IMG/VR virus record: IMGVR_UViG_3300027749_002876
Coordinates: 372,001-436,000 of that record
Direction: 5' to 3' (one strand)
Length of the DNA: 64,000 bases
The notes under the pieces are model-generated. The model did not search any database. It worked only from the letters and a program-made list of their open reading frames with translations, and had not been told where the DNA came from. This document shows positions 766-59,150 of this stretch, piece by piece. Positions within the stretch are counted from its first letter, which is position 1, and each line of letters begins with the position of its first letter. Both the position numbers and the translations under genes were made by a program.

Positions 766-3543
766 ATGGCAATGAATAACTCAAAGCTGTTAAGTGGTCG
801 TGCTCCGGTTACTCCTTATAGTAACCTGTCAAACGACCGCTACCAGTTCTTAGGGCTTAGTCAAGCAGAACCAAGTCTTGGTGCGGGTGCAGATAACTCG
901 GTATTGACAATAAGCACAAGTAATACTAGAGTTTGGAGTAACACCCTAAGTCTAAGTTCACTGACAGTTAATGGTGCAAGCAATCTTGGAAACATAGCCA
1001 ATGTACATATATTTGGTGGAGCCAATGGCCAACTAATTCAAACAGATGGTAGTGGTAATCTAATATTTGCTGATCCTGCAGTTAATACTAGTGCGGCACC
1101 AATGCCCTTCTACGTCCCTGTAGGAGAAACATATTATGTTCCCACTAACTTTCAAGGATTATTTACAGTTCCTATTGAGATTGACGGTGCGTTAGAAGTA
1201 GATGGTATATTAGCTGAAGTTGGTACTGCTATTAACTCACTTAATAGCCAAGTTATATTTGATGATAACGGTGAGTTAACCGGTAATACAGGATTCACAT
1301 TCGATACAGTATCAGGTAATTTATCAGTTCCTGGATCAGGAATATTTACTGGTAGCTTATTGCCTAGCGCAAATATTATATATGATTTAGGTAATACAAC
1401 CAATCGTTGGAACGATTTATATCTATCCGGTACTACAATTTATATTGGCAACAGTACAATTTCTACTGCAGGTGCAAATCTTGTTTTTACTAACGGCAAT
1501 GGTGGACAATTCGTACTAAGTGGAAATGCAAACACAACTAGCTTTTCTAGCGCCAATGGCTCAAGTGTACTAACACTACGTGAAACAGACATAACTTTTA
1601 CTGCTAACGGTAATGCAAATATCTTTAAAATTACTGGTACTGGTGTAAATGTAGCTGGAACATTAAGTTCAACTGGAAACGCCGCAGTCAGTGGTATATT
1701 AACTGACAATTATTATTACGCTAATGGTCAACCATTGGATGTGGGTGGTATACCCGGTGGTTCAAATACAACTATTCAATTCAATAATAACGGTGAATTT
1801 GCTGGAAGTAATAATCTAACATTTAATAGTACAGCCAACTTATTAACATTAAACGGAAATATAGCCGCAAGTAATGCTAATTTGGGTAATATTGTTACTG
1901 CTAACTATCTAGTATCAAATAGCGGATGTGTTCTTATTGGGAACGGAGCTATTGCAGTTATTGGTAACGCAGCCGGCTTTTTTAACTCAGGTATAACAGA
2001 TATTAATTTAGGCTTAGTAGCCAATGTTGTTGTAGGTAGCACTACCGGAAACGTCACAATTCAGGGTAATTTAATAGCTAATAATAATGTTACAGTAATT
2101 GGAAACGTTTCTGGTAATTTGTTAACAGGTACACTGACAACTCAGGCTCAACCAAACATCACAAGTACAGGTACATTAACTAGTTTAAGTGTAAGTGGCA
2201 ATAGTAACGTTGGTAATATTGGTGCTACTGGTGGCGTGTTCACTACTGTAACCGGTACATTAACAACGGCTTCACAACCTAACATCACTAGTGTTGGCAT
2301 ATTATCCGGATTGTCAGTAAGTGGTGGAATTGAAGTTAACGGTAATGTTCAAGCTAATACTAATATTGTAGTTACAGGAAATATATCATCAGGTAATGCT
2401 AACCTAGGTAATCTAGCAACAGCTAACTATTTCTCAGGCACATTAACAACGGCAGCACAACCAAATATCACAAGTACAGGAACATTAACTAGTTTAAGTG
2501 TTACTGGTACTATAAACTCCGGCAATCTAAGTGTTTCAGGCAATGTAGATTCGGGTAACTTAAACAGTTCTTTCTTAAGTATTACGGGAAATATAAACTC
2601 CGGAAATCTAAGTGCTTCTGGTAATATTAACTCTGGTAACCTAAGTGCTTCTGGTAATATTAACTCTGGCAATCTAAGTGTTACTGCTAATGTGATCTCC
2701 GGCAATATAAGTGCTACTGGTAACATAAATTCCGGCAATATAAGTGCTACTGGTAACATAAGTTCCGGTAATGTAAATGCCTCTTTCTTAAGCATTACCG
2801 GTAATATAACTTCGGGTAATTTAAGTGCATCGGGTAATATAGATGCTAGTAACTTTAATGGTTCATTCTTAAGTGTCACCGGGAATATAATCTCCGGTAA
2901 CATAAATTCAGGTAATGCTACATTTGGTAATATTACATCAAATGGCACAGGTGGTAACATTACTGGTGCTAATGTGATATCTGCCAATACATTCTCTGCC
3001 TCAGGTAACATCAGTTCTGCTAATTTAAATGCGTCTTTCTTAAGCATTACTGGAAACATAATCACCGGTAATTTAAGTACTTCGGGTAATATAGATTTTG
3101 GAAATTTAAATGGTTCGTTCCTAAGCATCACTGGTAATATAAATTCTGGTAATATAAGTGCATCGGGCAATATAAATTCTGCTAATTTGACAATTTCAAA
3201 TACAATTGATGCGGTAAACATAAAGGTTACGGATCTATATAGTAAACGTACATCAATTCCAATTACATCTAATACTCTAATTGACGTATTTCCTACTACC
3301 CAATTTAGGTCTGCGAAATATACAATGCGGGCAGGCAATGGAACTGATTTTCAAGCACTAGAAGTTCTTTTAGTTCACAATAGCATAAATAGTATTATAA
3401 CTGTTTATGGTAGTTTATCAACCTCGTCAACTGATTTGGTAGCTTTTGACACAGATATTAGTGCAGGAAATGTAAACGTATATGCGACAGCGGTTGGCGC
3501 AAATACAAATTTAAACTTAATGGGAACATATGTCCCGGATTAA
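766..3543 (+). CDS. Tail fibre-like protein, Gly/Asn/Ser-rich repeats
   Basis: 925 aa; TTxAQPNITSxGTL repeats, 11-aa SGNLSASGNIN tandem repeats, C-terminal FRSAKY domain shared with the next ORF. Confidence 0.75.
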   Translation: MAMNNSKLLSGRAPVTPYSNLSNDRYQFLGLSQAEPSLGAGADNSVLTISTSNTRVWSNTLSLSSLTVNGASNLGNIANVHIFGGANGQLIQTDGSGNLIFADPAVNTSAAPMPFYVPVGETYYVPTNFQGLFTVPIEIDGALEVDGILAEVGTAINSLNSQVIFDDNGELTGNTGFTFDTVSGNLSVPGSGIFTGSLLPSANIIYDLGNTTNRWNDLYLSGTTIYIGNSTISTAGANLVFTNGNGGQFVLSGNANTTSFSSANGSSVLTLRETDITFTANGNANIFKITGTGVNVAGTLSSTGNAAVSGILTDNYYYANGQPLDVGGIPGGSNTTIQFNNNGEFAGSNNLTFNSTANLLTLNGNIAASNANLGNIVTANYLVSNSGCVLIGNGAIAVIGNAAGFFNSGITDINLGLVANVVVGSTTGNVTIQGNLIANNNVTVIGNVSGNLLTGTLTTQAQPNITSTGTLTSLSVSGNSNVGNIGATGGVFTTVTGTLTTASQPNITSVGILSGLSVSGGIEVNGNVQANTNIVVTGNISSGNANLGNLATANYFSGTLTTAAQPNITSTGTLTSLSVTGTINSGNLSVSGNVDSGNLNSSFLSITGNINSGNLSASGNINSGNLSASGNINSGNLSVTANVISGNISATGNINSGNISATGNISSGNVNASFLSITGNITSGNLSASGNIDASNFNGSFLSVTGNIISGNINSGNATFGNITSNGTGGNITGANVISANTFSASGNISSANLNASFLSITGNIITGNLSTSGNIDFGNLNGSFLSITGNINSGNISASGNINSANLTISNTIDAVNIKVTDLYSKRTSIPITSNTLIDVFPTTQFRSAKYTMRAGNGTDFQALEVLLVHNSINSIITVYGSLSTSSTDLVAFDTDISAGNVNVYATAVGANTNLNLMGTYVPD
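2500..3190 (+). repeat. Degenerate 33-nt coding tandem repeat (SGNLSASGNIN)
   Basis: Near-exact copies such as ctaagtgcttctggtaatattaactctgg at about 2608-2670. Confidence 0.8.
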
Positions 3544-3555
3544 AAAGGAAATAAA

Positions 3556-6500
3556 ATGACTACAAAAAATTTCGTTGTTAAGAATGGTATTACAACAGGT
3601 AATATCGTTTTAGACGCCGCATCAGGTAATGTAACAGCTAACAACATATCGGTGTCTGGTAATGCAACGGTTGGTAATTTGATTACAACAGGAGCAGGTG
3701 GCGGTAATATTACCGGCGCTAACTTAATTTCTGCTAACTATTTTACAGGTACGTTAACAACTGCGGCACAACCAAATATCACTTCAGTTGGCACATTAGC
3801 AAGCCTATCAGTAGCTGCTAATGCCAATATTGGTAACATTGGTACAGGTGGATTAATTACTGCTACAGGTAATCTTAACGCAGGCAATTTAAATACAGGC
3901 GGTGTTGTATCTGCTACGGGCAATATTACTGGTGCTAATTTGATTACCGGTGGTTTAATTACTGCTACTGGCAATATTACTGGTGCTAATTTAGTTACAG
4001 GTGGTGTATTATCTGTAACAAGTAATGCTAATATTGGTAATATTGGCACAGCTGGTTTAATTACTGCTACTGGCAACATTACTGGTGGAAACTTAGTCAC
4101 TTCCAATGCAGTAAGTGCCGGTACATTAACAGTTTCTGGAGTAAGTAGTTTAGGTGCTATTGGTAATGTTAGAGTTACCGGTGGTACTAGTGGTCAAGTT
4201 GTGTCAACTGATGGTGCAGGTAATCTATCATTTATCTCAATCAGTTCTTCTGCACTTACAAATGGTAATAGTAATGTAACTGTATTAGCTAATGGCAATG
4301 TCACAATTTCAAGTACAGGAAATGCAAACGTATTAGTTGTTGATGGAGCTGGGGCTAATATAACAGGCACATTAACTGCTACTGGTAATATAACTTCTCC
4401 GTACTTCATTGGTAACGTTGTTGGTAACGTTTCTGGTAATATCTCAGGTAGTATTACTATCCCCGGTTCTAATACAGGTGTTGTATTCAATGACGCAGGT
4501 AATGCTAATACAAGTACAGCATTCACGTTTAATAAAGGTAGTAATCTAGTAACTATTACTAGTAACGCTAACGTAGGTAATTTAAATTCAAGCGGTTTTG
4601 TAACAAGTGCTAACTTAAGTGTATCAGGTAACGCTAACGTAGGTAATTTAGGTGTAACAGCATTAGTCGCAACTGGAGCAGGTAGCTTTGGTGCCAATGT
4701 TAATATGAACGGCTTTTTCTTAAGTAACATTGGATATGCAGTTTCAAATACAGATGCCGCATCTAAATTGTATGTTGATACAATGGTATCAAGTGGTATC
4801 AGTTATCACCAACCAGTCAATGTCGCAACTACAACTACATTAGCAGTTGCTACAGGCGGTACAACCGCATACAATTCACCTAATGGAGCTGCAAATGGTA
4901 TTGGTGCTTATATTAGTACAACTGGTACATTCTTATTAATTGACAGCGCAAACGTTCAAACAGTTGGTACACGTATCTTAGTTAAGAATGAAGCTAATGC
5001 AACATGGAATGGTGTTTATACATATTCTAATACGACAGCTATCGTTCGTTCTACTGATACTGACGAATATGGACCAGACAGCACAGAACAATTAAGTATC
5101 AATGATTACTTCTTTACACTAGGCGGTGTAGTTAATGAGGGTGTTGCTTTTGTAGTTAGTGCCCCAGCCGGAGTAATCACATTTGGTACTAGTAATATTA
5201 CATTCGCTGTATTCAGTACAAGTCAAATTTATGATGCTGGTACAGGTATTAATATTGTTGGTACTACAATTAGTGCTAACGCAAGTCAAACACAAATTAC
5301 AGCAATTGGTACATTGACAACATTATCAGTTTCTGGTAACGCTACAGTTGGTAACTTAACAACAGGTGGTTCAGGTGGTAACGTTACTGGTGCTAATGTA
5401 ATTGCAGCCAACACATTCAGTGCTACTGCTAACATTACCGGTGGTAATATCATTAGTGGTGGTATTGTTTCTGCTACAGGTAATGGTACATTTGGTAACA
5501 TTAGTACAGGTATAATTACTGCTACAGGTAACATCACTGGTGCTAATTTAATTGGCCCTCATGCTAATGGTAACAGTAATATTGCTATTACTGCTAATAG
5601 TAACATAGCAATGACAGTTGCAGGCACTGCAAACGTACTAGTAGTAACATCAACTGGTGCTAACATAACTGGTACATTAAGTGCAAGTGGTAATGCTAAC
5701 GTTGGTAACTTGGGTACAGGTGGATTGATTACTGCAACTGGTAATATAACTGGTGCTAATTTAATTACAGGTGGATTAGTTTCTGCTACAGGAAATATTA
5801 CTGGTGCTAATTTAATTGGCCCACATGCTAATGGTAACAGTAATGTTAATATTGCAACTGCAAACGGAAATGTAACTATTACTGCTGTAGGTAATACAAT
5901 AGTAACAGTTACAGGTACTGGTGCTAACATAGCCGGCACATTAAGTGTAACCGGTAACGCTAACATTGGCAACATAGGTACAGGTGGCTTAATTACTGCA
6001 ACAGGAAATATTACTGGTGCTAATTTAATAACAGGTGGCATTGTAAGTGCTACCGGTAATGGTACATTTGGTAACATTAGTACAGCCGGTACATTAACTG
6101 TTACAGGTAATGCTGTCGTTGGTAACTTAACAACTTCAGGTGGTTCAGGTGGTAACATTACTAATGCTAACGTGATTTCTGCGAACACATTCAGTGCTAG
6201 CGGTAATGTCACTGCTGGTAATTTGACTGTATCTGGATTAACTAGTTTAGGTGCAGTTGGTAATGTAGCAATCACTGGCGGTACTAGTGGACAAGTACTA
6301 AGTACAAATGGTTCAGGTGGATTGTCATTTATAACAATTGGCACAGCTGGCGTATCAAATGGTAATAGTAATGTTAGTATTGCAACAGCCGGAGGTAATG
6401 TAACTACAAGCGTAGCTGGTAATGCTAACATATTAGTTGTTACTGGAACAGGTGCTAATATAGCCGGTACATTAAGTGTATCAGGTAATGCTAACGTTGC

Positions 6501-8283
6501 TAACTTAGGTACAGCATTAATCACTGCTACTGGTAACATCACTGGTGCTAACTTAGTTACAGGTGGTGTATTGTCTGTTACAGGTAATGCTAACGTTGCT
6601 AACTTAGGTACAGCATTAATCACTGCTACTGGTAACATTACTGGTGCTAACTTAGTTACAGGTGGTTTACTATCTGTAACGGGTAACGCTACTGTTGGTA
6701 ATTTGATAACTGCAGGTGGTTCTGGTGGTAATATTAGTAATGCCAACGTAATCTCTGCTAACACATTCAATGGTACTACATTAAGTATAACAGGTAATGG
6801 TACATTTGGTAACATTAGTGCAGGAGCTGGTACAGGTGGTAACATCACTGGTGCTAACTTAGTTTCTGCTAACTTCTTTACTGGTACATTAACAACAGCG
6901 GCTCAACCAAATATCACAAGTACTGGTACATTAACAAGTTTAAGTGTTTCTGGCACAAGCAATTTAGGTGCAGTTGGTAATGTAACAATTACCGGTGGCT
7001 CAAATGGACAAGTTCTAACTACAAACGGTTCAGGTGGATTGTCATTCGTATCAATCAGTTCATCAAGTATCAGTAATGGAAATAGTAACGTAAATATTCC
7101 ATCAGCAAACGGCAATGTTAATATTAGTGCAGTTGGTACTGCAAACGTTGTTGTTGTAACTGCTACTGGTGCTAACGTCACAGGTACACTGAGTGTATCA
7201 GGTAATGCAACTGTTGGTAATTTAATAGGCCCACATGCTAACGGAAATAGCAATGTTAATATTGCAACTGCAAACGGCAATGTAACTATTGCGTCTGCAG
7301 GTAATACAACAATGACTGTTACTGGTACTGGCGCAAACATCACAGGTACATTGAGTGTATCAGGTAATGCTACAGTTGGTAACATAGTTGCAAGTGGTGG
7401 CGGTGGTGGTAACATCACAGGTGCTAACTTAGTTTCTGCCAACTACTTCACTGGTACATTAACAACAGGTGCACAACCTAATATCACAAGTACTGGTACA
7501 TTAACAAGTTTAAGTGTATCTGGCACAAGTAATTTAGGTGCTGTAGGTAATGTAACAATCACTGGTGGTACTAGTGGTCAAGTACTAAGTACAAATGGTT
7601 CAGGTGGATTGTCATTTATTTCAATCAGTTCATCAGGTATCAGCAACGGAAATAGTAATGTCAATATCGCTACTGCAAATGGTAATGTAACTATTGCTTC
7701 TGCAGGTAATACAACAATGACTGTTACTGGTACTGGTGCAAACATCACAGGTACATTGAGTGTATCAGGTAATGCTACTGTTGGTAATTTAATTTCAAGT
7801 GGTGCAGGTGGTGGTAACATCACAGGTGCTAACTTAGTTTCTGCTAACTACTTTACTGGTACATTAACTACAGGTGCACAACCTAATATCACAAGTACTG
7901 GTACACTAACAAGTTTGGTTGTAACAGGTAATGTTACAACTGGTAACGTTCTATTGAATGGTGGACTACAGAGTAATAGGTCAAATGTATCAGCAACAAC
8001 AAATACTGTTATTGACCAATTTGCAACAACAACTTATAGAACTGCTAAATATATCATCAGTGCTTCAAGTGCAAATGGATATCAGTCAATTGAAGCACTA
8101 TTAGTACAAGATGGAACAAACAGTTACATAACAATTTATGGATCAGTTTGTTCTAACGCAGTAGCAGACATTGTTGATATTAGCAGTAATATTAATGGTG
8201 TGTCAGGAAACGTGTCATTATATGCAACTAGTTCAGGTGGAACCGCAACAGTTAACTTAATAACAACTTACCTACTAACATAA
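3556..8283 (+). CDS. Giant tail fibre-like protein
   Basis: 1575 aa; ATGNITGANL, NGNSNVNIATANGNV and QPNITS repeats; SD AAGGA. Confidence 0.8.
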   Translation: MTTKNFVVKNGITTGNIVLDAASGNVTANNISVSGNATVGNLITTGAGGGNITGANLISANYFTGTLTTAAQPNITSVGTLASLSVAANANIGNIGTGGLITATGNLNAGNLNTGGVVSATGNITGANLITGGLITATGNITGANLVTGGVLSVTSNANIGNIGTAGLITATGNITGGNLVTSNAVSAGTLTVSGVSSLGAIGNVRVTGGTSGQVVSTDGAGNLSFISISSSALTNGNSNVTVLANGNVTISSTGNANVLVVDGAGANITGTLTATGNITSPYFIGNVVGNVSGNISGSITIPGSNTGVVFNDAGNANTSTAFTFNKGSNLVTITSNANVGNLNSSGFVTSANLSVSGNANVGNLGVTALVATGAGSFGANVNMNGFFLSNIGYAVSNTDAASKLYVDTMVSSGISYHQPVNVATTTTLAVATGGTTAYNSPNGAANGIGAYISTTGTFLLIDSANVQTVGTRILVKNEANATWNGVYTYSNTTAIVRSTDTDEYGPDSTEQLSINDYFFTLGGVVNEGVAFVVSAPAGVITFGTSNITFAVFSTSQIYDAGTGINIVGTTISANASQTQITAIGTLTTLSVSGNATVGNLTTGGSGGNVTGANVIAANTFSATANITGGNIISGGIVSATGNGTFGNISTGIITATGNITGANLIGPHANGNSNIAITANSNIAMTVAGTANVLVVTSTGANITGTLSASGNANVGNLGTGGLITATGNITGANLITGGLVSATGNITGANLIGPHANGNSNVNIATANGNVTITAVGNTIVTVTGTGANIAGTLSVTGNANIGNIGTGGLITATGNITGANLITGGIVSATGNGTFGNISTAGTLTVTGNAVVGNLTTSGGSGGNITNANVISANTFSASGNVTAGNLTVSGLTSLGAVGNVAITGGTSGQVLSTNGSGGLSFITIGTAGVSNGNSNVSIATAGGNVTTSVAGNANILVVTGTGANIAGTLSVSGNANVANLGTALITATGNITGANLVTGGVLSVTGNANVANLGTALITATGNITGANLVTGGLLSVTGNATVGNLITAGGSGGNISNANVISANTFNGTTLSITGNGTFGNISAGAGTGGNITGANLVSANFFTGTLTTAAQPNITSTGTLTSLSVSGTSNLGAVGNVTITGGSNGQVLTTNGSGGLSFVSISSSSISNGNSNVNIPSANGNVNISAVGTANVVVVTATGANVTGTLSVSGNATVGNLIGPHANGNSNVNIATANGNVTIASAGNTTMTVTGTGANITGTLSVSGNATVGNIVASGGGGGNITGANLVSANYFTGTLTTGAQPNITSTGTLTSLSVSGTSNLGAVGNVTITGGTSGQVLSTNGSGGLSFISISSSGISNGNSNVNIATANGNVTIASAGNTTMTVTGTGANITGTLSVSGNATVGNLISSGAGGGNITGANLVSANYFTGTLTTGAQPNITSTGTLTSLVVTGNVTTGNVLLNGGLQSNRSNVSATTNTVIDQFATTTYRTAKYIISASSANGYQSIEALLVQDGTNSYITIYGSVCSNAVADIVDISSNINGVSGNVSLYATSSGGTATVNLITTYLLT

Positions 8284-39471: not shown

Positions 39472-39776
39472 TGTCAAATGATACAGCAAAATACATAAAC
39501 AGCCGCCGCCGTCATAAAAATGATGTTGCAATTGCAAGACAAGTTCGTATTGCTAAACAACATGGTGTAAGTTTTTATGATAAATCAATTAAAGAACCAC
39601 ATCGTTTAGCAAAACATCATGTTATGGATTGTGGCAATCCACAATGCCCACTATGTGGCAATCCACGTAGGACACATAAAGATACACTAACAGCACAAGA
39701 GAAACGATTGTACCAAGATACTGAAAAAGCTACAGATAAACATAGCAATGGTTTAATAAAACAAATTGAAGATTGA
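39471..39776 (+). CDS. Hypothetical basic zinc-finger protein
   Basis: CGNPQCPLCGNPRR. Confidence 0.65.
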   Translation: MSNDTAKYINSRRRHKNDVAIARQVRIAKQHGVSFYDKSIKEPHRLAKHHVMDCGNPQCPLCGNPRRTHKDTLTAQEKRLYQDTEKATDKHSNGLIKQIED

Positions 39777-39808
39777 CATCTTTGATATACACACATAAAG
39801 GAATAAAA

Positions 39809-40276
39809 ATGTCAGAAACTATTAATAGCCTACACAGTGCATATTCTGGTGAAAGTCAAGCGCATACTAAGTATCGCTACTTTGCTAAAATCGCACGTGC
39901 AGAAGGATATGAAGATATCGCAAAACACTTTGAACATACAGCAGACCAAGAGTTGTTGCATTCATGGGGTCACCTAGAACTAATCATTGGTAAACCAGAT
40001 ACACGTAAATGTTTAGAGTTAGCAATTGAAGGTGAAACATATGAGTTTACGGAGATGTATCCTCACTTCCGTGAAGTTGCTGAATTTGAAGGTAACTTAC
40101 AGGCCGCAAATGAAGCAACGCATCAGATTGAAGAATCACAGCGCCATGCTAGTGAATTCAAAGAAGTATTGAAGAAAGCAGAAAAGCGTTTTGCGGCACT
40201 GGCTAAAGTTGAACAACGTCATGCTGAAGCATATCAAGCTAAGTTAGATGAATTAAATCAAGTGGAGGCAAGATAA
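39809..40276 (+). CDS. Rubrerythrin (ferritin-like)
   Basis: AYSGESQAHTKYRYFAKIARAEG, QELLH, EGETYE..EMYP, EQRH. Confidence 0.92.
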   Translation: MSETINSLHSAYSGESQAHTKYRYFAKIARAEGYEDIAKHFEHTADQELLHSWGHLELIIGKPDTRKCLELAIEGETYEFTEMYPHFREVAEFEGNLQAANEATHQIEESQRHASEFKEVLKKAEKRFAALAKVEQRHAEAYQAKLDELNQVEAR

Positions 40277-42408: not shown

Positions 42409-43221
42409 TTGATAAATAATGTTATGTTTAAAAATATTTCTAAATATGTATGGTTTGATTTTTTACCCACATTAATTTTTGGACTTATTGCAGTTTGGTT
42501 ACTAATTGCAAATATCATTCCTACTTACTATTTGTTCTTTACTCTTTTTAGTTGGATATTATTTGCTGGCTTGGGTGTTGCAGTAGGATATCACCGAATC
42601 TTTTCACACCAAACTCATCCTAAATTACCTCTTTGGAAAGAAAACATATTATTGTTTTGTGGAGCAATGAGTGGTCAAGGATCAAGTATTACATGGACCG
42701 CAATTCATATAGGAAATCATCATCCGTATAGTGATACCGATAGAGATTTACATTCCCCTACAAAAAGTATATTCAATGCATTCATTGGATGGTCATTAAA
42801 ACTCACCGAAACAAACGGACCCAATTTAGTTAATTTAAAATATGCAGTAAAACAACTTAGGAAACCAAATCATATATGGTTCCATAAACACTATCGAATT
42901 ATATATTGGACAATCCCTTTAATATTATTATTGATAGATTGGAAATTAGCATTAATGTTATCATTATTACCATCATCACTTGCATTAATACAAGACAATA
43001 TTGTTAATGTATTTGGTCACCGTAAAGGCTTTATAGGATACAGAAACTTTAATAATAAAGATTACTCTCAAAATAACTTTATTCTTGGTTTCTTAGCTTG
43101 GGGACAGGGTTGGCATAATAATCACCATCATGATCCTAAATCATATGATTTTGGTACTGGAGTTAGTGGCAAATGGTGGGAATTTGATCCATGCAGAATA
43201 TTTTTACCATTCTTAAAATAA
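42409..43221 (+). CDS. Membrane fatty acid (delta-9 type) desaturase
   Basis: His boxes HRIFSH, HIGNHH..SD...D.HSP, WHNNHH; TM segments; start may be ATG 42424. Confidence 0.92.
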   Translation: MINNVMFKNISKYVWFDFLPTLIFGLIAVWLLIANIIPTYYLFFTLFSWILFAGLGVAVGYHRIFSHQTHPKLPLWKENILLFCGAMSGQGSSITWTAIHIGNHHPYSDTDRDLHSPTKSIFNAFIGWSLKLTETNGPNLVNLKYAVKQLRKPNHIWFHKHYRIIYWTIPLILLLIDWKLALMLSLLPSSLALIQDNIVNVFGHRKGFIGYRNFNNKDYSQNNFILGFLAWGQGWHNNHHHDPKSYDFGTGVSGKWWEFDPCRIFLPFLK

Positions 43222-46616: not shown

Positions 46617-46664
46617 ACAAGTGATTAAATACAATTAGTGATAATAACAGAAAAGGAGTACTAC

Positions 46665-47225
46665 ATGGCTGTTCTAGCACTAGATATCTCGGGAGTTCCC
46701 CGGCAATGGATATCAAATGATGACGCAATTACCTATAAAGCAAAAGATGCCATTGCATGGTCAATGGGGAACATTGTGGCTAGATATCGAGGTGGCACAC
46801 AAAATGACGGCACATTAAGTTACTTAGAAGCTAGTAGCATTATTGCCATCAAAGGTCATGGATTCAATCCATATAAACACTCATGTGTAGCACTAACTAA
46901 TAAAACATTGTTCGGTCGTGATAGACATGTATGTGCTTATTGCGGTGAACAGTTTCCCAATTATCATCTATTAAGTCGTGACCACATTGTCCCTAGAAGT
47001 AAGGGTGGTGAAAACACTTGGATGAACGTGGTTACCAGTTGTAAAACTTGTAACAGTAAAAAAGGACATAAGAGTTTAAAAGAAGTACGTATGGAATTAT
47101 TATACGCACCTTATGTCCCAAATCACTACGAAAATATGATACTACAACATAGAACTATACTTGCTGACCAAATGGAATATTTGTTAGCAGGTGTTCCAAA
47201 ACATAGTAGAATATTATTAAGTTAG
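46665..47225 (+). CDS. HNH endonuclease (McrA-like)
   Basis: RDRHVCAYCG...DHIVPRSKGG..TWMNVVTSCKTCNSKKG; SD AAGGAG. Confidence 0.9.
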   Translation: MAVLALDISGVPRQWISNDDAITYKAKDAIAWSMGNIVARYRGGTQNDGTLSYLEASSIIAIKGHGFNPYKHSCVALTNKTLFGRDRHVCAYCGEQFPNYHLLSRDHIVPRSKGGENTWMNVVTSCKTCNSKKGHKSLKEVRMELLYAPYVPNHYENMILQHRTILADQMEYLLAGVPKHSRILLS

Positions 47226-47468: not shown

Positions 47469-48068
47469 ATGAAAATGAGCAAATCACAAGCAGGTAAATT
47501 AGGCGCAGAAGTTTCTGCACTAATTACAGCAAAAAAAAAGCAAGCAAATATAGAAGCATATCTGTCTAACCCAAAAAAATGTGGGCATTGTAATGCACTC
47601 ATTAATTATGAGGGTAGATATAAAAAATTTTGTAATTCATCTTGCTCTGCATCACATAATAATACAAAAAGATTAATTGTTTCAACTAATAGTTGTCCTC
47701 AATGTAGTAAGCTAATTGGAAAAAATAGTAAATATTGTTCGGTTCGTTGTCAGCAAGATTTTCAATCAGCAGAAACTATTAGAAAATGGATTGCAAGGGA
47801 AACAATAACGGGATTATCTGCTGTTCGCCGGCATATCAAAGAACAACAGGATAGTAAATGTGCTGAATGCGGTATCGCTGAGTGGAATGGAAAAAATATA
47901 ACATTAGAGCTTGAGCATAGAGACGGAAACAGTGATAATAATACTCCTGAAAATTTATGTTTATTATGCCCAAATTGTCATAGCCAAACCCCAACATACA
48001 AAGCAAAAAATAAAGGTAAGGGTAGACATTCGCGCCGAGAGCGATACAAAAACGGTCAAAGTTATTGA
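47469..48068 (+). mobile_element. HNH homing endonuclease within the tRNA array
   Basis: Zinc ribbons plus CAECG...LELEHRDGN..NN...NL.LLCPNCHSQT. Confidence 0.9.
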
Positions 48069-48154: not shown

Positions 48155-48736
48155 TCATTGAATTAGAAGTTGCCAGTCACTATGACTATAATGGTAATCT
48201 TCTAATATTTCTAACATTCGTGAAAAAACTATTAAGGCTCTTTTATGATTTACCAGTTCAGTATGATGAATGTTTATTTTTTTCTCAACAAAAGATTTTA
48301 ATATATTATCACCCTCTTTTTTTAATTTGATTTTTTTTGCAACAATGTTCAATTTTGTTATTAGAGCGTTACAATCTACTATAGCAGTATTGGTTTGATT
48401 TTGTGCATGATGTATGTCAAACTTCATTTGTAAAATTAAATCGTCAAATTCTGGATTTATCTGTTGACTGTATTGTGATACCATATTTGAAAGTCTTGCA
48501 TAAACTTCAGCATCAAGATTGGTATCATCATAATGATCTCCGGTACTATCATAGTGTTCACGTTTAACAGGATCACTTAATGTTTCATATGCTAATTTGA
48601 TTCGTTTAAATTTTTCTATATCACCACCTTTATCGGGATGATGTGTTTGTGCTAGTATTCTATATTTTTGTTTGATATCATCGGGAGTACAATTTTTGGG
48701 TAATTCTAGTTCATCGTATAAGGTGTTGTTTTCCAT
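48155..48736 (-). CDS. DnaJ-domain (J-domain) protein
   Basis: LYDELEL...IKQKYRILA..HHPDKGGD...AYETLSDPVKR..YD. Confidence 0.92.
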   Translation of the reverse strand: MENNTLYDELELPKNCTPDDIKQKYRILAQTHHPDKGGDIEKFKRIKLAYETLSDPVKREHYDSTGDHYDDTNLDAEVYARLSNMVSQYSQQINPEFDDLILQMKFDIHHAQNQTNTAIVDCNALITKLNIVAKKIKLKKEGDNILKSFVEKKINIHHTELVNHKRALIVFSRMLEILEDYHYSHSDWQLLIQ

Positions 48737-48925: not shown

Positions 48926-50104
48926 ATGAGAATTAATTCTATTGCTAGTACGATATTAGCAATCATACTTGTAGGATGCGGTGGCGGAGGTGGTCAACCA
49001 ACTACACCTATCATTGAAGCATATCCTCAAATTATAGATAACAATATAAAAAACAAGTTTGCTATTAAAAGTGTAAACATGGTTTTAAATAGTGATAGCC
49101 TGTTAGGACTACCCGGATGGACTAACATTGATGACCATATTAAAAACATTAAAGCATTGGGTGCTAATGATGTTAAAGTAACGATTAGTGCAGGGTATTA
49201 CGATACCCCATCTTCTAATAGTCCTAATTCAAATATTAACTTTAATCCAAGTGACAATGATTTGCTAACATTCTTTCGAAAGCTTAAAGCGGCAGGTTTA
49301 ACTATAACAGTTTACCCTTTTGTACATAAAAATACAAACGTTACCAATTTGTTAAGTACTGTTCATTCATCACCTTCTAATTTTGACGAATGGATATCTA
49401 ACCATACTAGTAGTATGTCAAGAATAGCAAATATAGCACAGCAAGGATCTGTGGATAGATTTGTAATTATAGGAGATGAGGTTCAACATCTAACGTATGA
49501 TGTTAAAAATCAAAATGGTTGGTTAAATCTCATTACAGAAATACGCAAGGTATATAAAGGACAATTAACCACTGTAATATATTCAAATGGAATGTACTAC
49601 AATGGAAAAAATCAGGTTGATATGGTTGGTGAGACTATATTAAGTAAATTGGATATTATTGGTGTAGGATGGTTTCCTAAATACTTAACTAATTCAAATA
49701 ATCCAACAGTTGCTGATTTGATTGCAGGTTGGAAAAATAATACAAATGGTGTAGACACTATTAAGTTTTTTGAATTAGTTAATCAAAAATATAAAAAACC
49801 AATTTGGATAGCTGATATGGCAATTCACAGTTTTGACGGAGACAATATTGATCCTGATAATATATACAACAACCTAATTAATTTAGTAACGGACGAACAG
49901 GAGCAAGCCGATGAATATGAAGCACTATTTACGGTATTGAGTTACAACATGGGCAATTGGTTTTTGGGAATGAGCATTGACAGTTATAACAATTTTCCTA
50001 GCAATTATACATTGCCAAGGCATTTAAATTCACCGTATAGTGAAGATATACGAGGTAAGATCGCTGAGGGTGTTGTCCGTAAATGGTATCGTCAGAAGAT
50101 GTAG
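48926..50104 (+). CDS. Lipoprotein with TIM-barrel glycoside hydrolase-like (GH113/GTA-like) domain
   Basis: Lipobox LVGC; IGDEV...IRKVYKGQLT...LDIIGV...KPIWIAD...DEQEQADEYEA. Confidence 0.65.
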   Translation: MRINSIASTILAIILVGCGGGGGQPTTPIIEAYPQIIDNNIKNKFAIKSVNMVLNSDSLLGLPGWTNIDDHIKNIKALGANDVKVTISAGYYDTPSSNSPNSNINFNPSDNDLLTFFRKLKAAGLTITVYPFVHKNTNVTNLLSTVHSSPSNFDEWISNHTSSMSRIANIAQQGSVDRFVIIGDEVQHLTYDVKNQNGWLNLITEIRKVYKGQLTTVIYSNGMYYNGKNQVDMVGETILSKLDIIGVGWFPKYLTNSNNPTVADLIAGWKNNTNGVDTIKFFELVNQKYKKPIWIADMAIHSFDGDNIDPDNIYNNLINLVTDEQEQADEYEALFTVLSYNMGNWFLGMSIDSYNNFPSNYTLPRHLNSPYSEDIRGKIAEGVVRKWYRQKM

Positions 50105-50107
50105 GGC

Positions 50108-50136
50108 TTGACACTAAATGAGTATTCTGCTATAAT
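50108..50136 (+). promoter_or_regulatory. Sigma70 promoter
   Basis: TTGACA-17-TATAAT with TGn. Confidence 0.85.
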
Positions 50137-50157
50137 ATAGACAAGCCAAAAATCTAT

Positions 50158-50232
50158 CTGGGGTTAGTATAATGGATAATACAGCTGCCTTCTAAGCAGT
50201 CAATACAGGTTCGATTCCTGTACCCCGGACCA
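50158..50232 (+). tRNA. tRNA-Arg(TCT) copy 2
   Basis: gctgc-CT-TCT-AA-gcagt, CCA. Confidence 0.95.
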
Positions 50233-50261
50233 AATGTTGTTTATTTACAACAACTAATAGT

Positions 50262-50372
50262 TTGACAATAAATCCAAATAGTGCTATACTCTATGTATAG
50301 ATTGATTGAACAAGTTCTTGGACACAGAGACACAAAAAAGAATTTGACAATAAATGGTGATTGTGATACAAT
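50262..50372 (+). promoter_or_regulatory. Tandem sigma70 promoters
   Basis: TTGACA-17-TATACT (50262-50290) and TTGACA-17-TACAAT (50344-50372). Confidence 0.8.
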
Positions 50373-50412
50373 CATAGCATGAGTTGAAAAAGTCATCGTA
50401 CTAATCAACAAA

Positions 50413-50424
50413 GTTCTTTAAAAA
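50413..50424 (+). promoter_or_regulatory. boxA-like Nus antitermination site
   Basis: GTTCTTTAAAAA fits GYTCTTTAANA, about 35 nt into the leader of a stable-RNA transcript. Confidence 0.65.
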
Positions 50425-50460
50425 GTTAAGTTATCATATAGCCCTGTACAAGTTACAGGG

Positions 50461-50695
50461 ACTATATGTAAACATATTAAGGGTTACCTGATCCGTTAGG
50501 ATGTACGAAGGTTATAAGGGTATCGACGGATACACGCCGAGACATACATCAGGAAGCGTATGATAACGAAAGTTATGAACGTGACGGGCAGTTAGGCAGT
50601 AATGACGAAGTTCAGAGTTCCCGGTGTACAAGCCGGGGTACAGGAGACGGTCCTGGACAGACGAATGTAGTTCCCATAATGTGTTTTCATATAGT
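50461..50695 (+). ncRNA. Stem-bracketed ornate RNA B (about 195-nt core)
   Basis: Closing stem actatatgtaaacatatta/taatgtgttttcatatagt; internal atccgtt/gacggat, catac/gtatg, ataac-GAAA-gttat, cccgg/ccggg, cagga/tcctg. Confidence 0.75.
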
Positions 50696-50825
50696 GTGTT
50701 ATTAGTTTTGCTGATGTAAGCCATGGGGGAAACGTCAACCCTGAGTAACTATGTATATAAACGGTAGTGTGGCCACCAATTCCGTTGAGACATAGCAAAC
50801 AGTGCGTCAGCAAAACTAATAATAT
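50696..50825 (+). ncRNA. Stem-bracketed RNA C
   Basis: ttattagttttgctgatg/cgtcagcaaaactaataa closing stem; internal ctatgt/acatag, aacgg/ccgtt. Confidence 0.7.
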
Positions 50826-50828
50826 TTG

Positions 50829-50904
50829 GCTCGGTTCATCTAGCGGCCTAGGATAGTGCCCTTTCACGGCATTCACACGGGTTCGAATCCCGTACCGAGC
50901 TCCA
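50829..50904 (+). tRNA. tRNA-Glu(TTC)
   Basis: gtgcc-CT-TTC-AC-ggcat, CCA. Confidence 0.95.
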
Positions 50905-51104
50905 GTATCCCGTTACTATTTTCGTTAAAATAGCGTTTGATTAGCGACAGAGATCCGGTGGCAGAAAACCGTTAGCGTGAGGATTAAAAATACCCTCGCA
51001 GGCTCTGATAGGCAGAATCTCAACTGCACACAGACTTTGAATAAATGAGATGGACAGAGTAACCGCTCAATTAAGGGCTGGCGTGGAAACAAGTAGCTTA
51101 TACT
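50905..51104 (+). ncRNA. Unidentified multi-stem RNA between tRNA-Glu and tRNA-Tyr
   Basis: ctatttt/aaaatag, cggt/accg, gcg..gagg/cctcgc, atctca/tgagat stems; no credible ORF. Confidence 0.6.
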
Positions 51105-51110
51105 AATTTT

Positions 51111-51195
51111 GGAGATGAAGCATCAATGGTGATGCAGTGGATTGTAAATCCGCCGCCTTATGGCACGACTGGTTCAATCCCAGTAATCTCCACCA
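51111..51195 (+). tRNA. tRNA-Tyr(GTA)
   Basis: gtgga-TT-GTA-AA-tccgc, long variable arm, CCA. Confidence 0.93.
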
Positions 51196-51200
51196 ATATT

Positions 51201-51275
51201 GGTCTCAAAGTGTTCACGGACGCATACATGCCTGTCACGCATGAGGAGCGGGATCGTTACCCGCTGGGACCGCCA
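51201..51275 (+). tRNA. tRNA-Asp(GTC)
   Basis: catgc-CT-GTC-AC-gcatg; atypical T-loop ATCGTTA. Confidence 0.88.
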
Positions 51276-51281
51276 AAATAT

Positions 51282-51310
51282 TTGACAACAAAAACTATTT
51301 GATATATAAT
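51282..51310 (+). promoter_or_regulatory. Sigma70 promoter
   Basis: TTGACA-17-TATAAT. Confidence 0.85.
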
Positions 51311-51327
51311 ACAGATTGTTTATAAAT

Positions 51328-51412
51328 GCGGGCATGGGGAAATTGGTTAGACCCAATAGACTTAAAATCTATCGCCTTGTGCATCCCGGTTCGAGTCCGG
51401 GTGCCCGCACCA
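51328..51412 (+). tRNA. tRNA-Leu(TAA)
   Basis: ataga-CT-TAA-AA-tctat, long variable arm. Confidence 0.95.
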
Positions 51413-51421
51413 AAGAATGAT

Positions 51422-51498
51422 GCCCCTTTAATTAAATCAGGTTATAATGCCGGCCTCATAAGCCGTTTTTCTGGGTTCAAATCCCAGCGGGGGTACCA
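51422..51498 (+). tRNA. tRNA(CAT), probably Ile2 (lysidine) or Met
   Basis: cggc-CT-CAT-AA-gccg, GCCCC acceptor, CCA. Confidence 0.8.
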
Positions 51499-51506
51499 TG
51501 TATTTA

Positions 51507-51595
51507 GGAGAGTTGGGTGAGTGGTTAAACCAGCAGATTGCTAATCTGTCACTGTGAATAACGGTGCGTGGGTTCGAATCCCACACTCTCCGCCA
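51507..51595 (+). tRNA. tRNA-Ser(GCT)
   Basis: gcaga-TT-GCT-AA-tctgt, long variable arm. Confidence 0.95.
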
Positions 51596-52157
51596 AACTT
51601 TTTAGTAATTCTTCAATGCTAATATTTAAGAATGATAACCCGAAAATAATTCGTGTGGTTTTGATATTTTCCACACTGTGAAAGTTTCTGCTATTCATTA
51701 GATACCAAGTACCAGTATTAAAAAAATATTCTTGTTGTGCAGATACCTCTTTATATGTAAGTACATTTCCTCCTACAGTATCACTTGCTAAATCTTCTTT
51801 ATCATAAAAGATAGTGCTAACATTATCTCCACCTAACTCAATATAAAAATTTATACTTGCTGTTCGCACTCTATCAGAGTGTGGTGGATATGATGCAAAT
51901 TCTATAGGATTTATATTATGTATAACACCAATTGTTGCATATAGTTTATGCTTAAACAATGGCTGGAATTCTTGTGTAGCTATGAGATTAATACTGTCGT
52001 TAGAAAAAAAATCACCAGCGGCACAGTTAATATCAGGACCTTGTATTGAACTGTGCCAATTTCTAGAACTAACATTTATTGGTCGATCTAGAGCGACTGA
52101 TTTAACTAAGTTAATTAAGTTATCAGATGGTTTAGGTAATTGCAAAGTATAAATCAT
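51549..52157 (-). CDS. 2OG-Fe(II) oxygenase-like protein; 3' end overlaps tRNA-Ser on the opposite strand
   Basis: PPHSD..TASINFY...FHSVEN...RIIFG; minus-strand TATAAATA upstream. Confidence 0.6.
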   Translation of the reverse strand: MIYTLQLPKPSDNLINLVKSVALDRPINVSSRNWHSSIQGPDINCAAGDFFSNDSINLIATQEFQPLFKHKLYATIGVIHNINPIEFASYPPHSDRVRTASINFYIELGGDNVSTIFYDKEDLASDTVGGNVLTYKEVSAQQEYFFNTGTWYLMNSRNFHSVENIKTTRIIFGLSFLNISIEELLKSLAESVGFEPTHRYSQ

Positions 52158-54630: not shown

Positions 54631-55275
54631 TTATTTTTTATTAATAGAAGAAACTTGTGCTGTTCTAATTATATGACCGACAGGATCAACGGATTTACAC
54701 TTATCTCCGTGCCATCTTTTAAGATTGCCATTTGATACTATAAATCCGCAATGTTGACATGTGTATTTAGGGGGCGACATTCCTTTGTTAGTTGTTTTGC
54801 CTTTTCGGTAAGCAGATAGTTTTGCTCTTTTTTGGTCTGATCCGATTTTGCCGGTATTTGATATAGCAATATTTTTTTTGTGTTCTTCTGATTTAGGACG
54901 ACCTTTTCCTGCTATGGACATTTTATTTCTTGTTTTTTCAGTTAATATATTAACCCTACGAAATATTTCTACGTTTGAATTCGGGTCATGATATTTGCCA
55001 TTTAATAACAACGGGTTCCCCCATTCTTGTTTAATTGTAATTTGTTCTTGTTGCCAGCACTTGACAGAATCTATATTTCTATATATAATCTCTATTATAA
55101 ATGCCTCTTTTCCGTACTGTTTTATATCTTTCTTTATACGAGTAGAAGATGTAAAATATATTATCCAAAGGTCATGTTCTGGAGTAATTCCAAGTGTTTG
55201 GTTTTTATAGCGGTACCCGTAGTAAAATTCGCTAGTAATTTTGTTAGTTATTTTGTAAACATAAGCGTCAATCAT
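54631..55275 (-). mobile_element. GIY-YIG/NUMOD3 (Seg-like) homing endonuclease
   Basis: YVYKITNK...YYGYR...YFTSS; KSEEHKKNI repeats; CQHCG...RWHGDKCK. Confidence 0.85.
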
Positions 55276-58699: not shown

Positions 58700-58926
58700 T
58701 GAACGAAAGAATTAAAGAACTTATTGAGCAGGCTGAAGATTATTCGGCAGAGCAACATGCCCCCTATTCACACCATGAACGTGTGTTGAGGTACGAAGTT
58801 TTTAAGGAGAAGTTTGCCGAATTGATTGTTAAGGAATGTATGAATGTTTTAGATCCGGGTGGTCATCAATTGATAGCACGTTTTCACACAAGACAATGGT
58901 TGTCAGAACATTTTGGAGTAGAATGA
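58699..58926 (+). CDS. Small phage protein (MNERIKEL...EKFAELIVKEC...HFGVE)
   Basis: SD GGAG, TAATG coupling. Confidence 0.7.
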   Translation: MNERIKELIEQAEDYSAEQHAPYSHHERVLRYEVFKEKFAELIVKECMNVLDPGGHQLIARFHTRQWLSEHFGVE

Positions 58927-59150
58927 AAGTAAACGATATATTACAATGGACTGGTGCAGTATTTATTATTGCTGGCCATATCTGTAACGCAATTGGACCT
59001 GATGCACACCCCTACAACATTGTAGCATTTACATTAGGTACAATTATGTTTTTAACATGGACAATCCGTGTAAAGAATAACCCGCAATTGGTAGTAAACG
59101 TAGTAGCAATAGTTACTTGTTTAATTGGTTTAGTTAATGCATGGAGATAA
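58923..59150 (+). CDS. Small membrane protein
   Basis: Three hydrophobic segments; SD GGAG. Confidence 0.65.
   Translation: MKVNDILQWTGAVFIIAGHICNAIGPDAHPYNIVAFTLGTIMFLTWTIRVKNNPQLVVNVVAIVTCLIGLVNAWR

What the first reader, a model, noticed from the sequence alone, without database searches (positions are those of the whole stretch)
50480..50676. Ornate ~195-nt RNA with a possible pseudoknot as first product of the boxA operon
Seen: a GC-richer non-coding region with at least five stems and a GAAA tetraloop; cctgat near the 5' end is complementary to atcagg in a hairpin loop. An upstream hairpin (catatag-ccctgta/tacaggg-a-ctatatg, 50435-50468) competes with the closing stem, suggesting alternative folds. 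I cannot match it to tmRNA, RNase P, SRP or 6S.
Basis: partly seen in the sequence, partly recalled or inferred. Interest (0 to 1): 0.62.

Follow-up and report, generated by a model that had tools for sequence, protein, structure and literature searches.

The report
New structured RNA of huge phages
The flagged stretch is the gene of a real, expressed, about 193-nucleotide folded RNA of a previously undescribed family, found once per genome in huge freshwater phages and made from an operon built like a bacterial ribosomal RNA operon; its job is still unknown.

Summary
The finding holds up. Window 50483-50675 (+) is a non-coding RNA gene with no match among the 4227 Rfam families. I found 81 copies (60 distinct sequences) in uncultured phage contigs with genomes of about 320-370 kb, one copy per genome, mostly inside tRNA arrays. 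Covariation supports a 22-bp closing helix P1, a long-range helix P2/P2b, a long arm P3, a GNRA-capped hairpin P4 and a hairpin P6 with a conserved GACG loop. Lake metatranscriptome contigs cover only the RNA genes. One contig is exactly 50483-50675 with a sequencing adapter abutting 50483. These ends sit in P1 with a 2-nt 3' overhang, as RNase III would leave. Upstream lie tandem sigma-70 promoters, a boxB-like hairpin, a boxA and a conserved leader hairpin that competes with outer P1, as in an rRNA operon leader. I infer antiterminated transcription, leader-trailer helix formation and RNase III release of a stable trans-acting RNA. Its function is not shown. Two further unrelated structured RNAs (B, and the very abundant C) share the operon.

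The parts
50262..50290 (+). Upstream promoter of a tandem pair (TTGACA-17-TATACT, TG-extended)
   Evidence: Consensus scan, 11 of 12 matches. Conserved in the second genomic copy.
50344..50372 (+). Proximal sigma-70-type promoter (TTGACA-17-TACAAT, TG-extended). Start of transcription inferred near 50379-50380.
   Evidence: In 30 of 51 distinct relatives' contexts that also carry a boxA, a consensus promoter lies upstream of P1, 62-84 nt in most.
50383..50409 (+). boxB-like leader hairpin (gttga ... tcaac)
   Evidence: Read from the sequence. Relatives carry a compact hairpin at the same place, such as GTTGA-GAAA-TCAAC or CTAGTTAG-AAAT-TAACTAG.
50413..50424 (+). boxA (GTTCTTTAAAAA), the inferred NusB/NusE loading site
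   Evidence: The only exact match in the window. Present in 34 of 51 distinct upstream contexts, 36-46 nt upstream of P1 in most. Two relatives have GTTCTTTAACAA, 11 of 12 identical to the E. coli rrn boxA as I recall it.
50435..50468 (+). Leader hairpin whose 3' arm (50462-50468) is also the outermost part of the P1 5' strand, giving alternative pairing
   Evidence: conserved, with covarying arms, in relatives with a boxA leader.
50461..50483 (+). P1, 5' (leader) strand of the 22-bp closing leader-trailer helix
   Evidence: RNAalifold. Pair counts: 17 of 22 pairs changed on both sides, 94% paired.
50483..50675 (+). Mature RNA of about 193 nt, as seen in lake metatranscriptomes
   Evidence: Run X2, record 19 matches 50483-50675 with no differences and has an Illumina adapter abutting 50483. 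Run X3, record 26 also starts at 50483. Covariance model R1 scores 125 bits, E 2e-35.
50487..50496 (+). 5' strands of P2 (50487-50492, cctgat) and P2b (50493-50496, ccgt)
   Evidence: They pair with 50591-50596 (gttagg) and 50584-50587 (acgg). Covarying versions: CCUACA/UGUAGG, CCAAUU/AAUUGG, CCGU/RCGG, CCAG/CUGG, CUAG/CUAG.
50500..50550 (+). P3 arm: P3a (50500-50505 with 50545-50550), internal loops, and P3c (50520-50524 with 50529-50533) with a GACG loop
   Evidence: Almost every homologue folds into the same three-segment arm (the two exceptions are sequences my anchor cut short). P3a is 80% canonical against 34-48% for slid partners, with 4-6 pair types per position.
50556..50582 (+). P4 arm with GAAA tetraloop (50568-50571)
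   Evidence: GNRA-capped hairpin in most homologues: GAAA, GCAA, GUAA, GAGA, GUGA.
50584..50596 (+). 3' strands of P2b (50584-50587) and P2 (50591-50596), separated by a 3-nt bulge
50597..50605 (+). Junction strand CAGUAAUGA; its GUAAUG is invariant in the 43-sequence alignment
   Evidence: Invariant columns of A3, including the diverged subfamily.
50620..50637 (+). Insert hairpin (cccgg-tgtacaag-ccggg) specific to the window's lineage
   Evidence: Present only in the window and its second genomic copy; absent from all other homologues.
50641..50655 (+). P6 hairpin with the conserved loop GACGG
   Evidence: All 6 model pairs changed on both sides. The loop's central G is invariant and its neighbouring A, G, A and C are at least 90% conserved.
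50673..50695 (+). P1, 3' (trailer) strand
50694..50827 (+). Element B, a second conserved RNA in the same operon: a long hairpin with a closing stem of about 20 bp
   Evidence: 17 distinct homologues; compensatory change gtggccac to ccagctgg in the apical hairpin.
50829..50904 (+). tRNA-Glu(UUC), the next product of the operon
50905..51110 (+). Element C, a third conserved structured RNA of the operon, unrelated in sequence to A
   Evidence: 25 distinct homologues. Not hit by the A profile or by R1. Contig depth 1276-7206 in three of the four runs.

Best explanation
Window 50483-50675 encodes a stable, intricately folded non-coding RNA of a new family, which I call A. It occurs once per genome in a clade of uncultured phages of about 350 kb from fresh water. 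They are T4-superfamily jumbo myoviruses, whose nearest cultured relatives infect Proteobacteria.

How it is made. Steps 1-3 are inferred from anatomy plus what is established for rRNA operons. Step 4 is partly shown.
1. Host sigma-70 RNA polymerase starts at the tandem promoters (50262, 50344).
2. The nascent leader presents a boxB-like hairpin and boxA (50413-50424). These recruit the host NusB/NusE antitermination complex, as in rrn operons.
3. A leader hairpin (50435-50468) temporarily holds the first 8 nt of the P1 5' strand. About 200 nt later the trailer strand (50673-50695) emerges and the 22-bp leader-trailer helix P1 forms around the folded core.
4. Host RNase III cuts P1 with a 2-nt stagger, releasing an RNA of about 193 nt (5' end G50483, 3' end C50675). 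RNase P then frees the tRNAs that follow.

What it does (inferred, not shown). The excised RNA acts in trans. It has two three-way junctions with invariant purine-rich strands (UAGG, RGAA, GUAAUG), a GNRA tetraloop and conserved GACG loops. It also exists as a stand-alone gene with its own promoter in some relatives. I therefore take it to be the RNA part or RNA decoy of a protein complex, most likely connected with translation or tRNA use during infection.
For: Real gene and real structure:
- No Rfam match.
- 81 copies, 60 distinct, found with model R1 at 39-180 bits.
- Covariation of P1, P2, P2b, P3, P6: 92% paired against 37-44% for slid partners, 24 of 31 pairs with two-sided changes, 0 of 500 shuffles. 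Independent of the model.
- The two genomic copies differ at 3 of 197 positions while the flanking tRNAs and promoters differ by about 20%.

Expression and ends:
- Freshwater metatranscriptome contigs cover 50121-51674 only, with zero on the flanking protein genes.
- One contig equals 50483-50675, with an adapter abutting 50483, and a second run has the same start.
- G50483 pairs with C50673, which leaves CC as a 2-nt 3' overhang.

rrn-like leader:
- Promoters; boxA at a near-constant distance in most of the 34 of 51 contexts that have it and unique in the window; boxB-like hairpin and competing leader hairpin conserved.
- The rrn parallels (boxB-boxA-boxC after P2, leader-trailer helices cut by RNase III, boxA tethering proposed to promote helix formation) are taken from PMC10250234.

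Trans action:
- About 12 loci carry A alone with its own promoter, with the -10 box ending 6-7 nt before P1 in the ten with a detectable promoter, and no tRNA nearby.
- One copy per genome.

The RNase must be the host's, because no RNase III gene is found in the record.
Against: - The function is not addressed by any data here.
- No partner protein was found. The only recurrent neighbour of the stand-alone copies is a small, probably membrane, protein. Its homologue in the window lies 8 kb away, so the link looks like synteny.
- The ends come from assembled contigs, not raw reads. The 3' end is only a contig end, and the strand rests on adapter orientation and gene context.
- RNase III cleavage and Nus-factor binding are inferred by analogy.
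- 17 of 51 upstream contexts lack boxA, so antitermination is not obligatory.
- The host is unknown.
Confidence: 0.55

Rival explanations
1. A is a cis-acting spacer with no trans function. It would be a folding and processing module that merely organises transcription and maturation of the downstream tRNAs, like a transcribed spacer, and is then discarded.
For: In about 70 of 83 loci it lies in a tRNA array, and a tRNA starts 1-14 nt after P1 in many of them. It is the first element of the boxA operon.
Against: Stand-alone copies have their own promoter and no tRNA nearby. Core nucleotides are invariant far from any processing site. It accumulates as a discrete contig in metatranscriptomes. 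A spacer would not need two conserved three-way junctions and a GNRA loop.
Confidence: 0.12
2. A is a self-assembling RNA that forms RNA-only multimers (a cage or scaffold), like the phage-associated GOLLD, ROOL and manA RNAs.
For: It shares their genomic habit: phage-borne and next to tRNAs. Conserved apical loops (GACG, GNRA) could act as intermolecular contacts. RNAs under 200 nt, including manA, can form 60-mers (bioRxiv 10.64898/2026.07.01.735769). GOLLD and ROOL nanocages are described in bioRxiv 10.1101/2024.12.08.627333.
Against: Rfam models of these families give no hit. No self-complementary loop is conserved across the family. Nothing here tests oligomerisation.
Confidence: 0.1
3. 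A is a decoy or sponge against a host factor. It would sequester a host nuclease, defence protein or ribosomal/translation factor during infection.
For: It is an abundantly transcribed, stable, protein-free-standing phage RNA with conserved exposed purine-rich junctions, single-copy, and independent of tRNAs in some genomes.
Against: No mimicry of a known RNA was detected: no Rfam match, no tRNA-like, CRISPR-repeat-like or rRNA-like hit. The idea rests on analogy only.
Confidence: 0.1
4. A is a ribozyme, either self-cleaving or acting on the co-transcribed RNAs.
For: Complex conserved junctions and a GNRA loop are typical of catalytic RNAs.
Against: No match to any ribozyme model. Both ends fall within a perfect 22-bp duplex with a 2-nt stagger, the signature of RNase III rather than of self-cleavage.
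Confidence: 0.06
5. A is a riboswitch-like or T-box-like leader that senses a ligand or tRNA and controls the downstream tRNA operon.
For: It sits 5' of tRNA genes and has alternative pairing between the leader hairpin and P1.
Against: No terminator or other expression platform follows it. It is excised as a discrete RNA. Stand-alone copies have nothing downstream to control. The alternative pairing involves only the processing helix.
Confidence: 0.04

Closest known systems
Bacterial rRNA operon leader and pre-16S leader-trailer helix (boxB-boxA-boxC, rrnTAC, RNase III)
   Same: Tandem promoters; a leader with a hairpin followed by boxA; further leader helices; a long (22-bp) helix formed by sequences flanking the structured RNA; ends consistent with RNase III; tRNA genes downstream in the same transcript (PMC10250234).
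   Different: The RNA enclosed is 193 nt and unrelated to 16S, 23S or 5S rRNA (no SSU, LSU or 5S hit). It is phage-encoded. No boxC was recognised. A third of the relatives lack boxA.
Phage T4 stable RNAs rnaC (species 1, 139 nt) and rnaD (species 2, 119 nt)
   Same: Small stable RNAs of unknown function encoded within a phage tRNA cluster that also holds homing endonuclease genes, in a T4-superfamily phage (PMC9697503).
   Different: No detectable homology: R1 gives only noise on the T4 cluster, at most 6 bits. They sit at the end of the T4 cluster, whereas A sits at the start of its operon. No boxA leader or 22-bp leader-trailer helix is known to me for them.
GOLLD and ROOL large ornate RNAs (and the manA motif of cyanophages)
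   Same: Phage or prophage-borne, typically next to tRNA genes, highly structured, function unknown (bioRxiv 10.1101/2024.12.08.627333; PMC5737381, listed).
   Different: GOLLD and ROOL are several hundred nucleotides long, from my own knowledge. Their Rfam models do not match here. Multimer formation is untested for A.
Bacterial Y RNAs (YrlA) with Ro60/Rsr
   Same: An RNA of about 100-200 nt whose 5' and 3' ends form a long stem, sometimes phage-encoded near tRNAs (PMC4201824, listed).
   Different: No Ro60/TROVE or RtcB gene in the record. No YrlA Rfam hit. The long stem is removed during maturation rather than kept as a protein-binding site. No tRNA-like module.

Membership tests
Any of the 4227 Rfam 15 families (including tmRNA, RNase P, SRP, 6S, Y RNA, GOLLD, ROOL, ribozymes, riboswitches) | Covariance-model score at or above the family's gathering threshold | tested here: not met
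   In the whole window only tRNAs reach threshold. At E up to 10 on 50230-51120 only chance-level hits appear: mir-19, two snoRNAs.
rrn-type antiterminated operon | boxA sequence in the leader, downstream of the promoter | tested here: met
   GTTCTTTAAAAA at 50413-50424. Conserved in 34 of 51 contexts, 36-46 nt before P1 in most.
rrn-type antiterminated operon | boxB-like hairpin 5' of boxA | tested here: met
   50383-50409. Compact hairpins at the same place in relatives.
rrn-type antiterminated operon | Leader-trailer helix longer than 17 bp enclosing the structured RNA | tested here: met
   22 bp, 17 pairs with two-sided changes. The threshold is from PMC10250234.
rrn-type antiterminated operon | RNase III cleavage of the leader-trailer helix | tested here: inconclusive
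   Contig ends 50483 and 50675 lie in P1 with a 2-nt 3' overhang, but they come from contigs only and no enzyme test was possible.
rrn-type antiterminated operon | Binding of NusB/NusE and antitermination | not testable with these tools
   Needs biochemistry or reporter assays.
Y RNA / YrlA | Ro60 (TROVE) partner encoded in the genome | tested here: not met
   PF05731 is absent from the 524-kb record, while the control genomes respond.
T4 rnaC / rnaD | Sequence and structure homology | tested here: not met
   R1 with filters off on the T4 tRNA cluster gives at most 6 bits and nothing on rnaC or rnaD.
GOLLD / ROOL | Match to the family model; size of several hundred nucleotides | tested here: not met
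   No Rfam hit. The mature length is about 193 nt.
GOLLD / ROOL | Phage-borne and adjacent to tRNA genes | tested here: met
GOLLD / ROOL | RNA-only multimer | not testable with these tools
   Needs SEC or cryo-EM.
Protein-coding gene | Conserved open reading frame | tested here: not met
   The 70-aa minus-strand ORF 50512-50724 has no Pfam match.

The most novel reading that the evidence does not exclude
A, B and C together form a phage 'mini-rrn operon'. On this reading the phage copies the host's rRNA expression and maturation pathway (boxA antitermination, leader-trailer helices, RNase III) to mass-produce its own set of structured RNAs. These would be RNA subunits of a new phage ribonucleoprotein or ribozyme that reprograms translation or tRNA metabolism, or RNA-only assemblies. 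That would make A a new functional class of RNA, not just a new family.
Probability: 0.15. Interest if true: 0.9.

Novelty: new variant of a known kind. Interest (0 to 1): 0.68.

Why it matters
- Stable RNAs of unknown function in phage tRNA clusters have been an open question since T4's species 1 and 2 RNAs. GOLLD and ROOL revived the question.
- This adds a compact (193-nt), well-defined family with a solid covariation-backed fold, defined ends and proof of expression in nature. That makes it tractable for structure determination and pull-downs.
- It also shows a phage using the architecture of the host rRNA operon (boxA, leader hairpins, leader-trailer helix) for its own non-coding RNAs. 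I did not find this described in the papers searched.
- The neighbouring element C reaches very high depth in lake metatranscriptomes, so these RNAs may be among the most abundant phage transcripts in fresh water.

Tried and rejected
1. Rfam at gathering and at E up to 10: nothing but tRNAs.
2. blastn of 50230-50830 against 50,697 phage records: no match.
4. Pseudoknots of CCGUU with the GACGG loops or with UAAUG. The diverged subfamily changes CCGU to CCAG together with RCGG to CUGG, while the loops stay GACG. The partner is therefore the internal RCGG, forming P2b.
5. Y RNA: no TROVE, no RtcB.
6. Phage-encoded RNase III: none.
7. Coding potential: none.
8. Bacterial homologues. The exact two-motif pattern hit 2 MAG contigs among 596 billion bases, about what chance predicts by my estimate. 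R1 does not recognise them.
9. Cultured relatives (Sinorhizobium phage Phosso, Pseudomonas PA5oct, Vibrio 2.275.O, Cronobacter GAP32): no R1 hit below E 0.09.
10. T4 rnaC and rnaD: no similarity.
11. Element C as a paralogue of A. It shares the short motifs CCGTTAG and TAGGCAG, but neither the A profile nor R1 detects it.
12. A partner protein from the neighbours of stand-alone copies: only a small DUF6552-like protein that looks syntenic.
13. Resemblances I noticed by eye to 16S helix 45/530-loop, the 23S GTPase centre, SRP and RNase P conserved regions. They are short and not collinear, and no model hit backs them, so I dropped them as chance.
14. Not used: the large protein searches, structure prediction and the metagenome-contig scan. 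The question did not depend on them.

Full report
Setting. The window is bases 372001-436000 of a 524,565-bp IMG/VR virus record with 36.7% GC. Window 44.4-55.9 kb is a tRNA array. ARAGORN finds 25 tRNAs and Rfam adds one more tRNA hit. HNH and GIY-YIG-like endonuclease genes are interspersed. The large terminase is 43-51% identical to those of the jumbo myoviruses Sinorhizobium phage Phosso, Pseudomonas phage PA5oct, Vibrio phage 2.275.O and Cronobacter phage GAP32. The phage is therefore a T4-superfamily jumbo phage whose nearest cultured relatives infect Proteobacteria.

Noticed in passing
window 50905-51110: Element C is a conserved structured RNA of about 205 nt between tRNA-Glu and a tRNA-Tyr-like gene. 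It has 25 distinct homologues with covarying hairpins and long invariant stretches, and no Rfam hit. Summed contig depth in three of the four lake or freshwater metatranscriptomes is 1276-7206, against 5-48 for A in the same runs. It may be among the most abundant phage RNAs in these samples. The A profile and R1 do not detect it.
   Followed up: partly
window 50694-50827: Element B is a long hairpin with a near-perfect closing stem of about 20 bp, another possible RNase III substrate. It has 17 distinct homologues and a compensatory change (gtggccac to ccagctgg) in its apical hairpin. Depth in metatranscriptomes is low.
   Followed up: partly
window 51111-51192: A tRNA-like gene that Rfam finds (35.4 bits) but ARAGORN misses. 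Its anticodon loop reads GTA, which would make it a class II tRNA-Tyr with a long variable arm. ARAGORN calls tRNA-Tyr(gta) in the tRNA arrays of several relatives.
   Followed up: partly
G000 whole record (window = 372001-436000): The 524,565-bp record consists of a unique core of about 183 kb, holding the only terminase gene at 256.6 kb, flanked by two inverted arms of about 175 kb that are 65-91% identical (mostly 73-85%). In addition 172924-177012 repeats 520477-524565 at 99.6%. Complete relatives are 320-367 kb. The record is probably a chimeric assembly of two related phages, not one 524-kb genome.
   Followed up: partly
window 46638-47225, 47469-48068, 54631-55275: HNH endonuclease genes (one clear, one weak) and a weak SegE-type GIY-YIG match lie between the tRNA genes. 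T4's tRNA cluster likewise holds the homing endonuclease gene segB. They may explain the shuffling of the array between relatives.
   Followed up: no
L101:2840-2985, L109, L138, L147 (upstream of their A copies): In one subtype, A is preceded not by a boxA leader but by a GC-rich conserved stretch starting GGGTGGTAGTCTTTAAACCGAAAGGCCGC. It looks like yet another structured RNA.
   Followed up: no
L130:75-533 (-): One contig carries two tandem, diverged copies of A. The downstream copy's P1 starts right after the upstream copy's P1.
   Followed up: no
window 39773-40276, 42409-43221, 48155-48736, 48926-50104: Auxiliary genes around the array: rubrerythrin, a fatty-acid desaturase, a DnaJ-domain protein and a GH113-like glycoside hydrolase.
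   Followed up: no
window 58926-59144 and L091:1007-1243: A small (75-90 aa) protein with weak DUF6552 similarity is encoded next to stand-alone A copies, about 35 nt upstream in five of the ten loci that have it. In the window its homologue lies 8 kb downstream, beyond the tRNA array. This suggests the array was inserted between A and this gene.
   Followed up: partly
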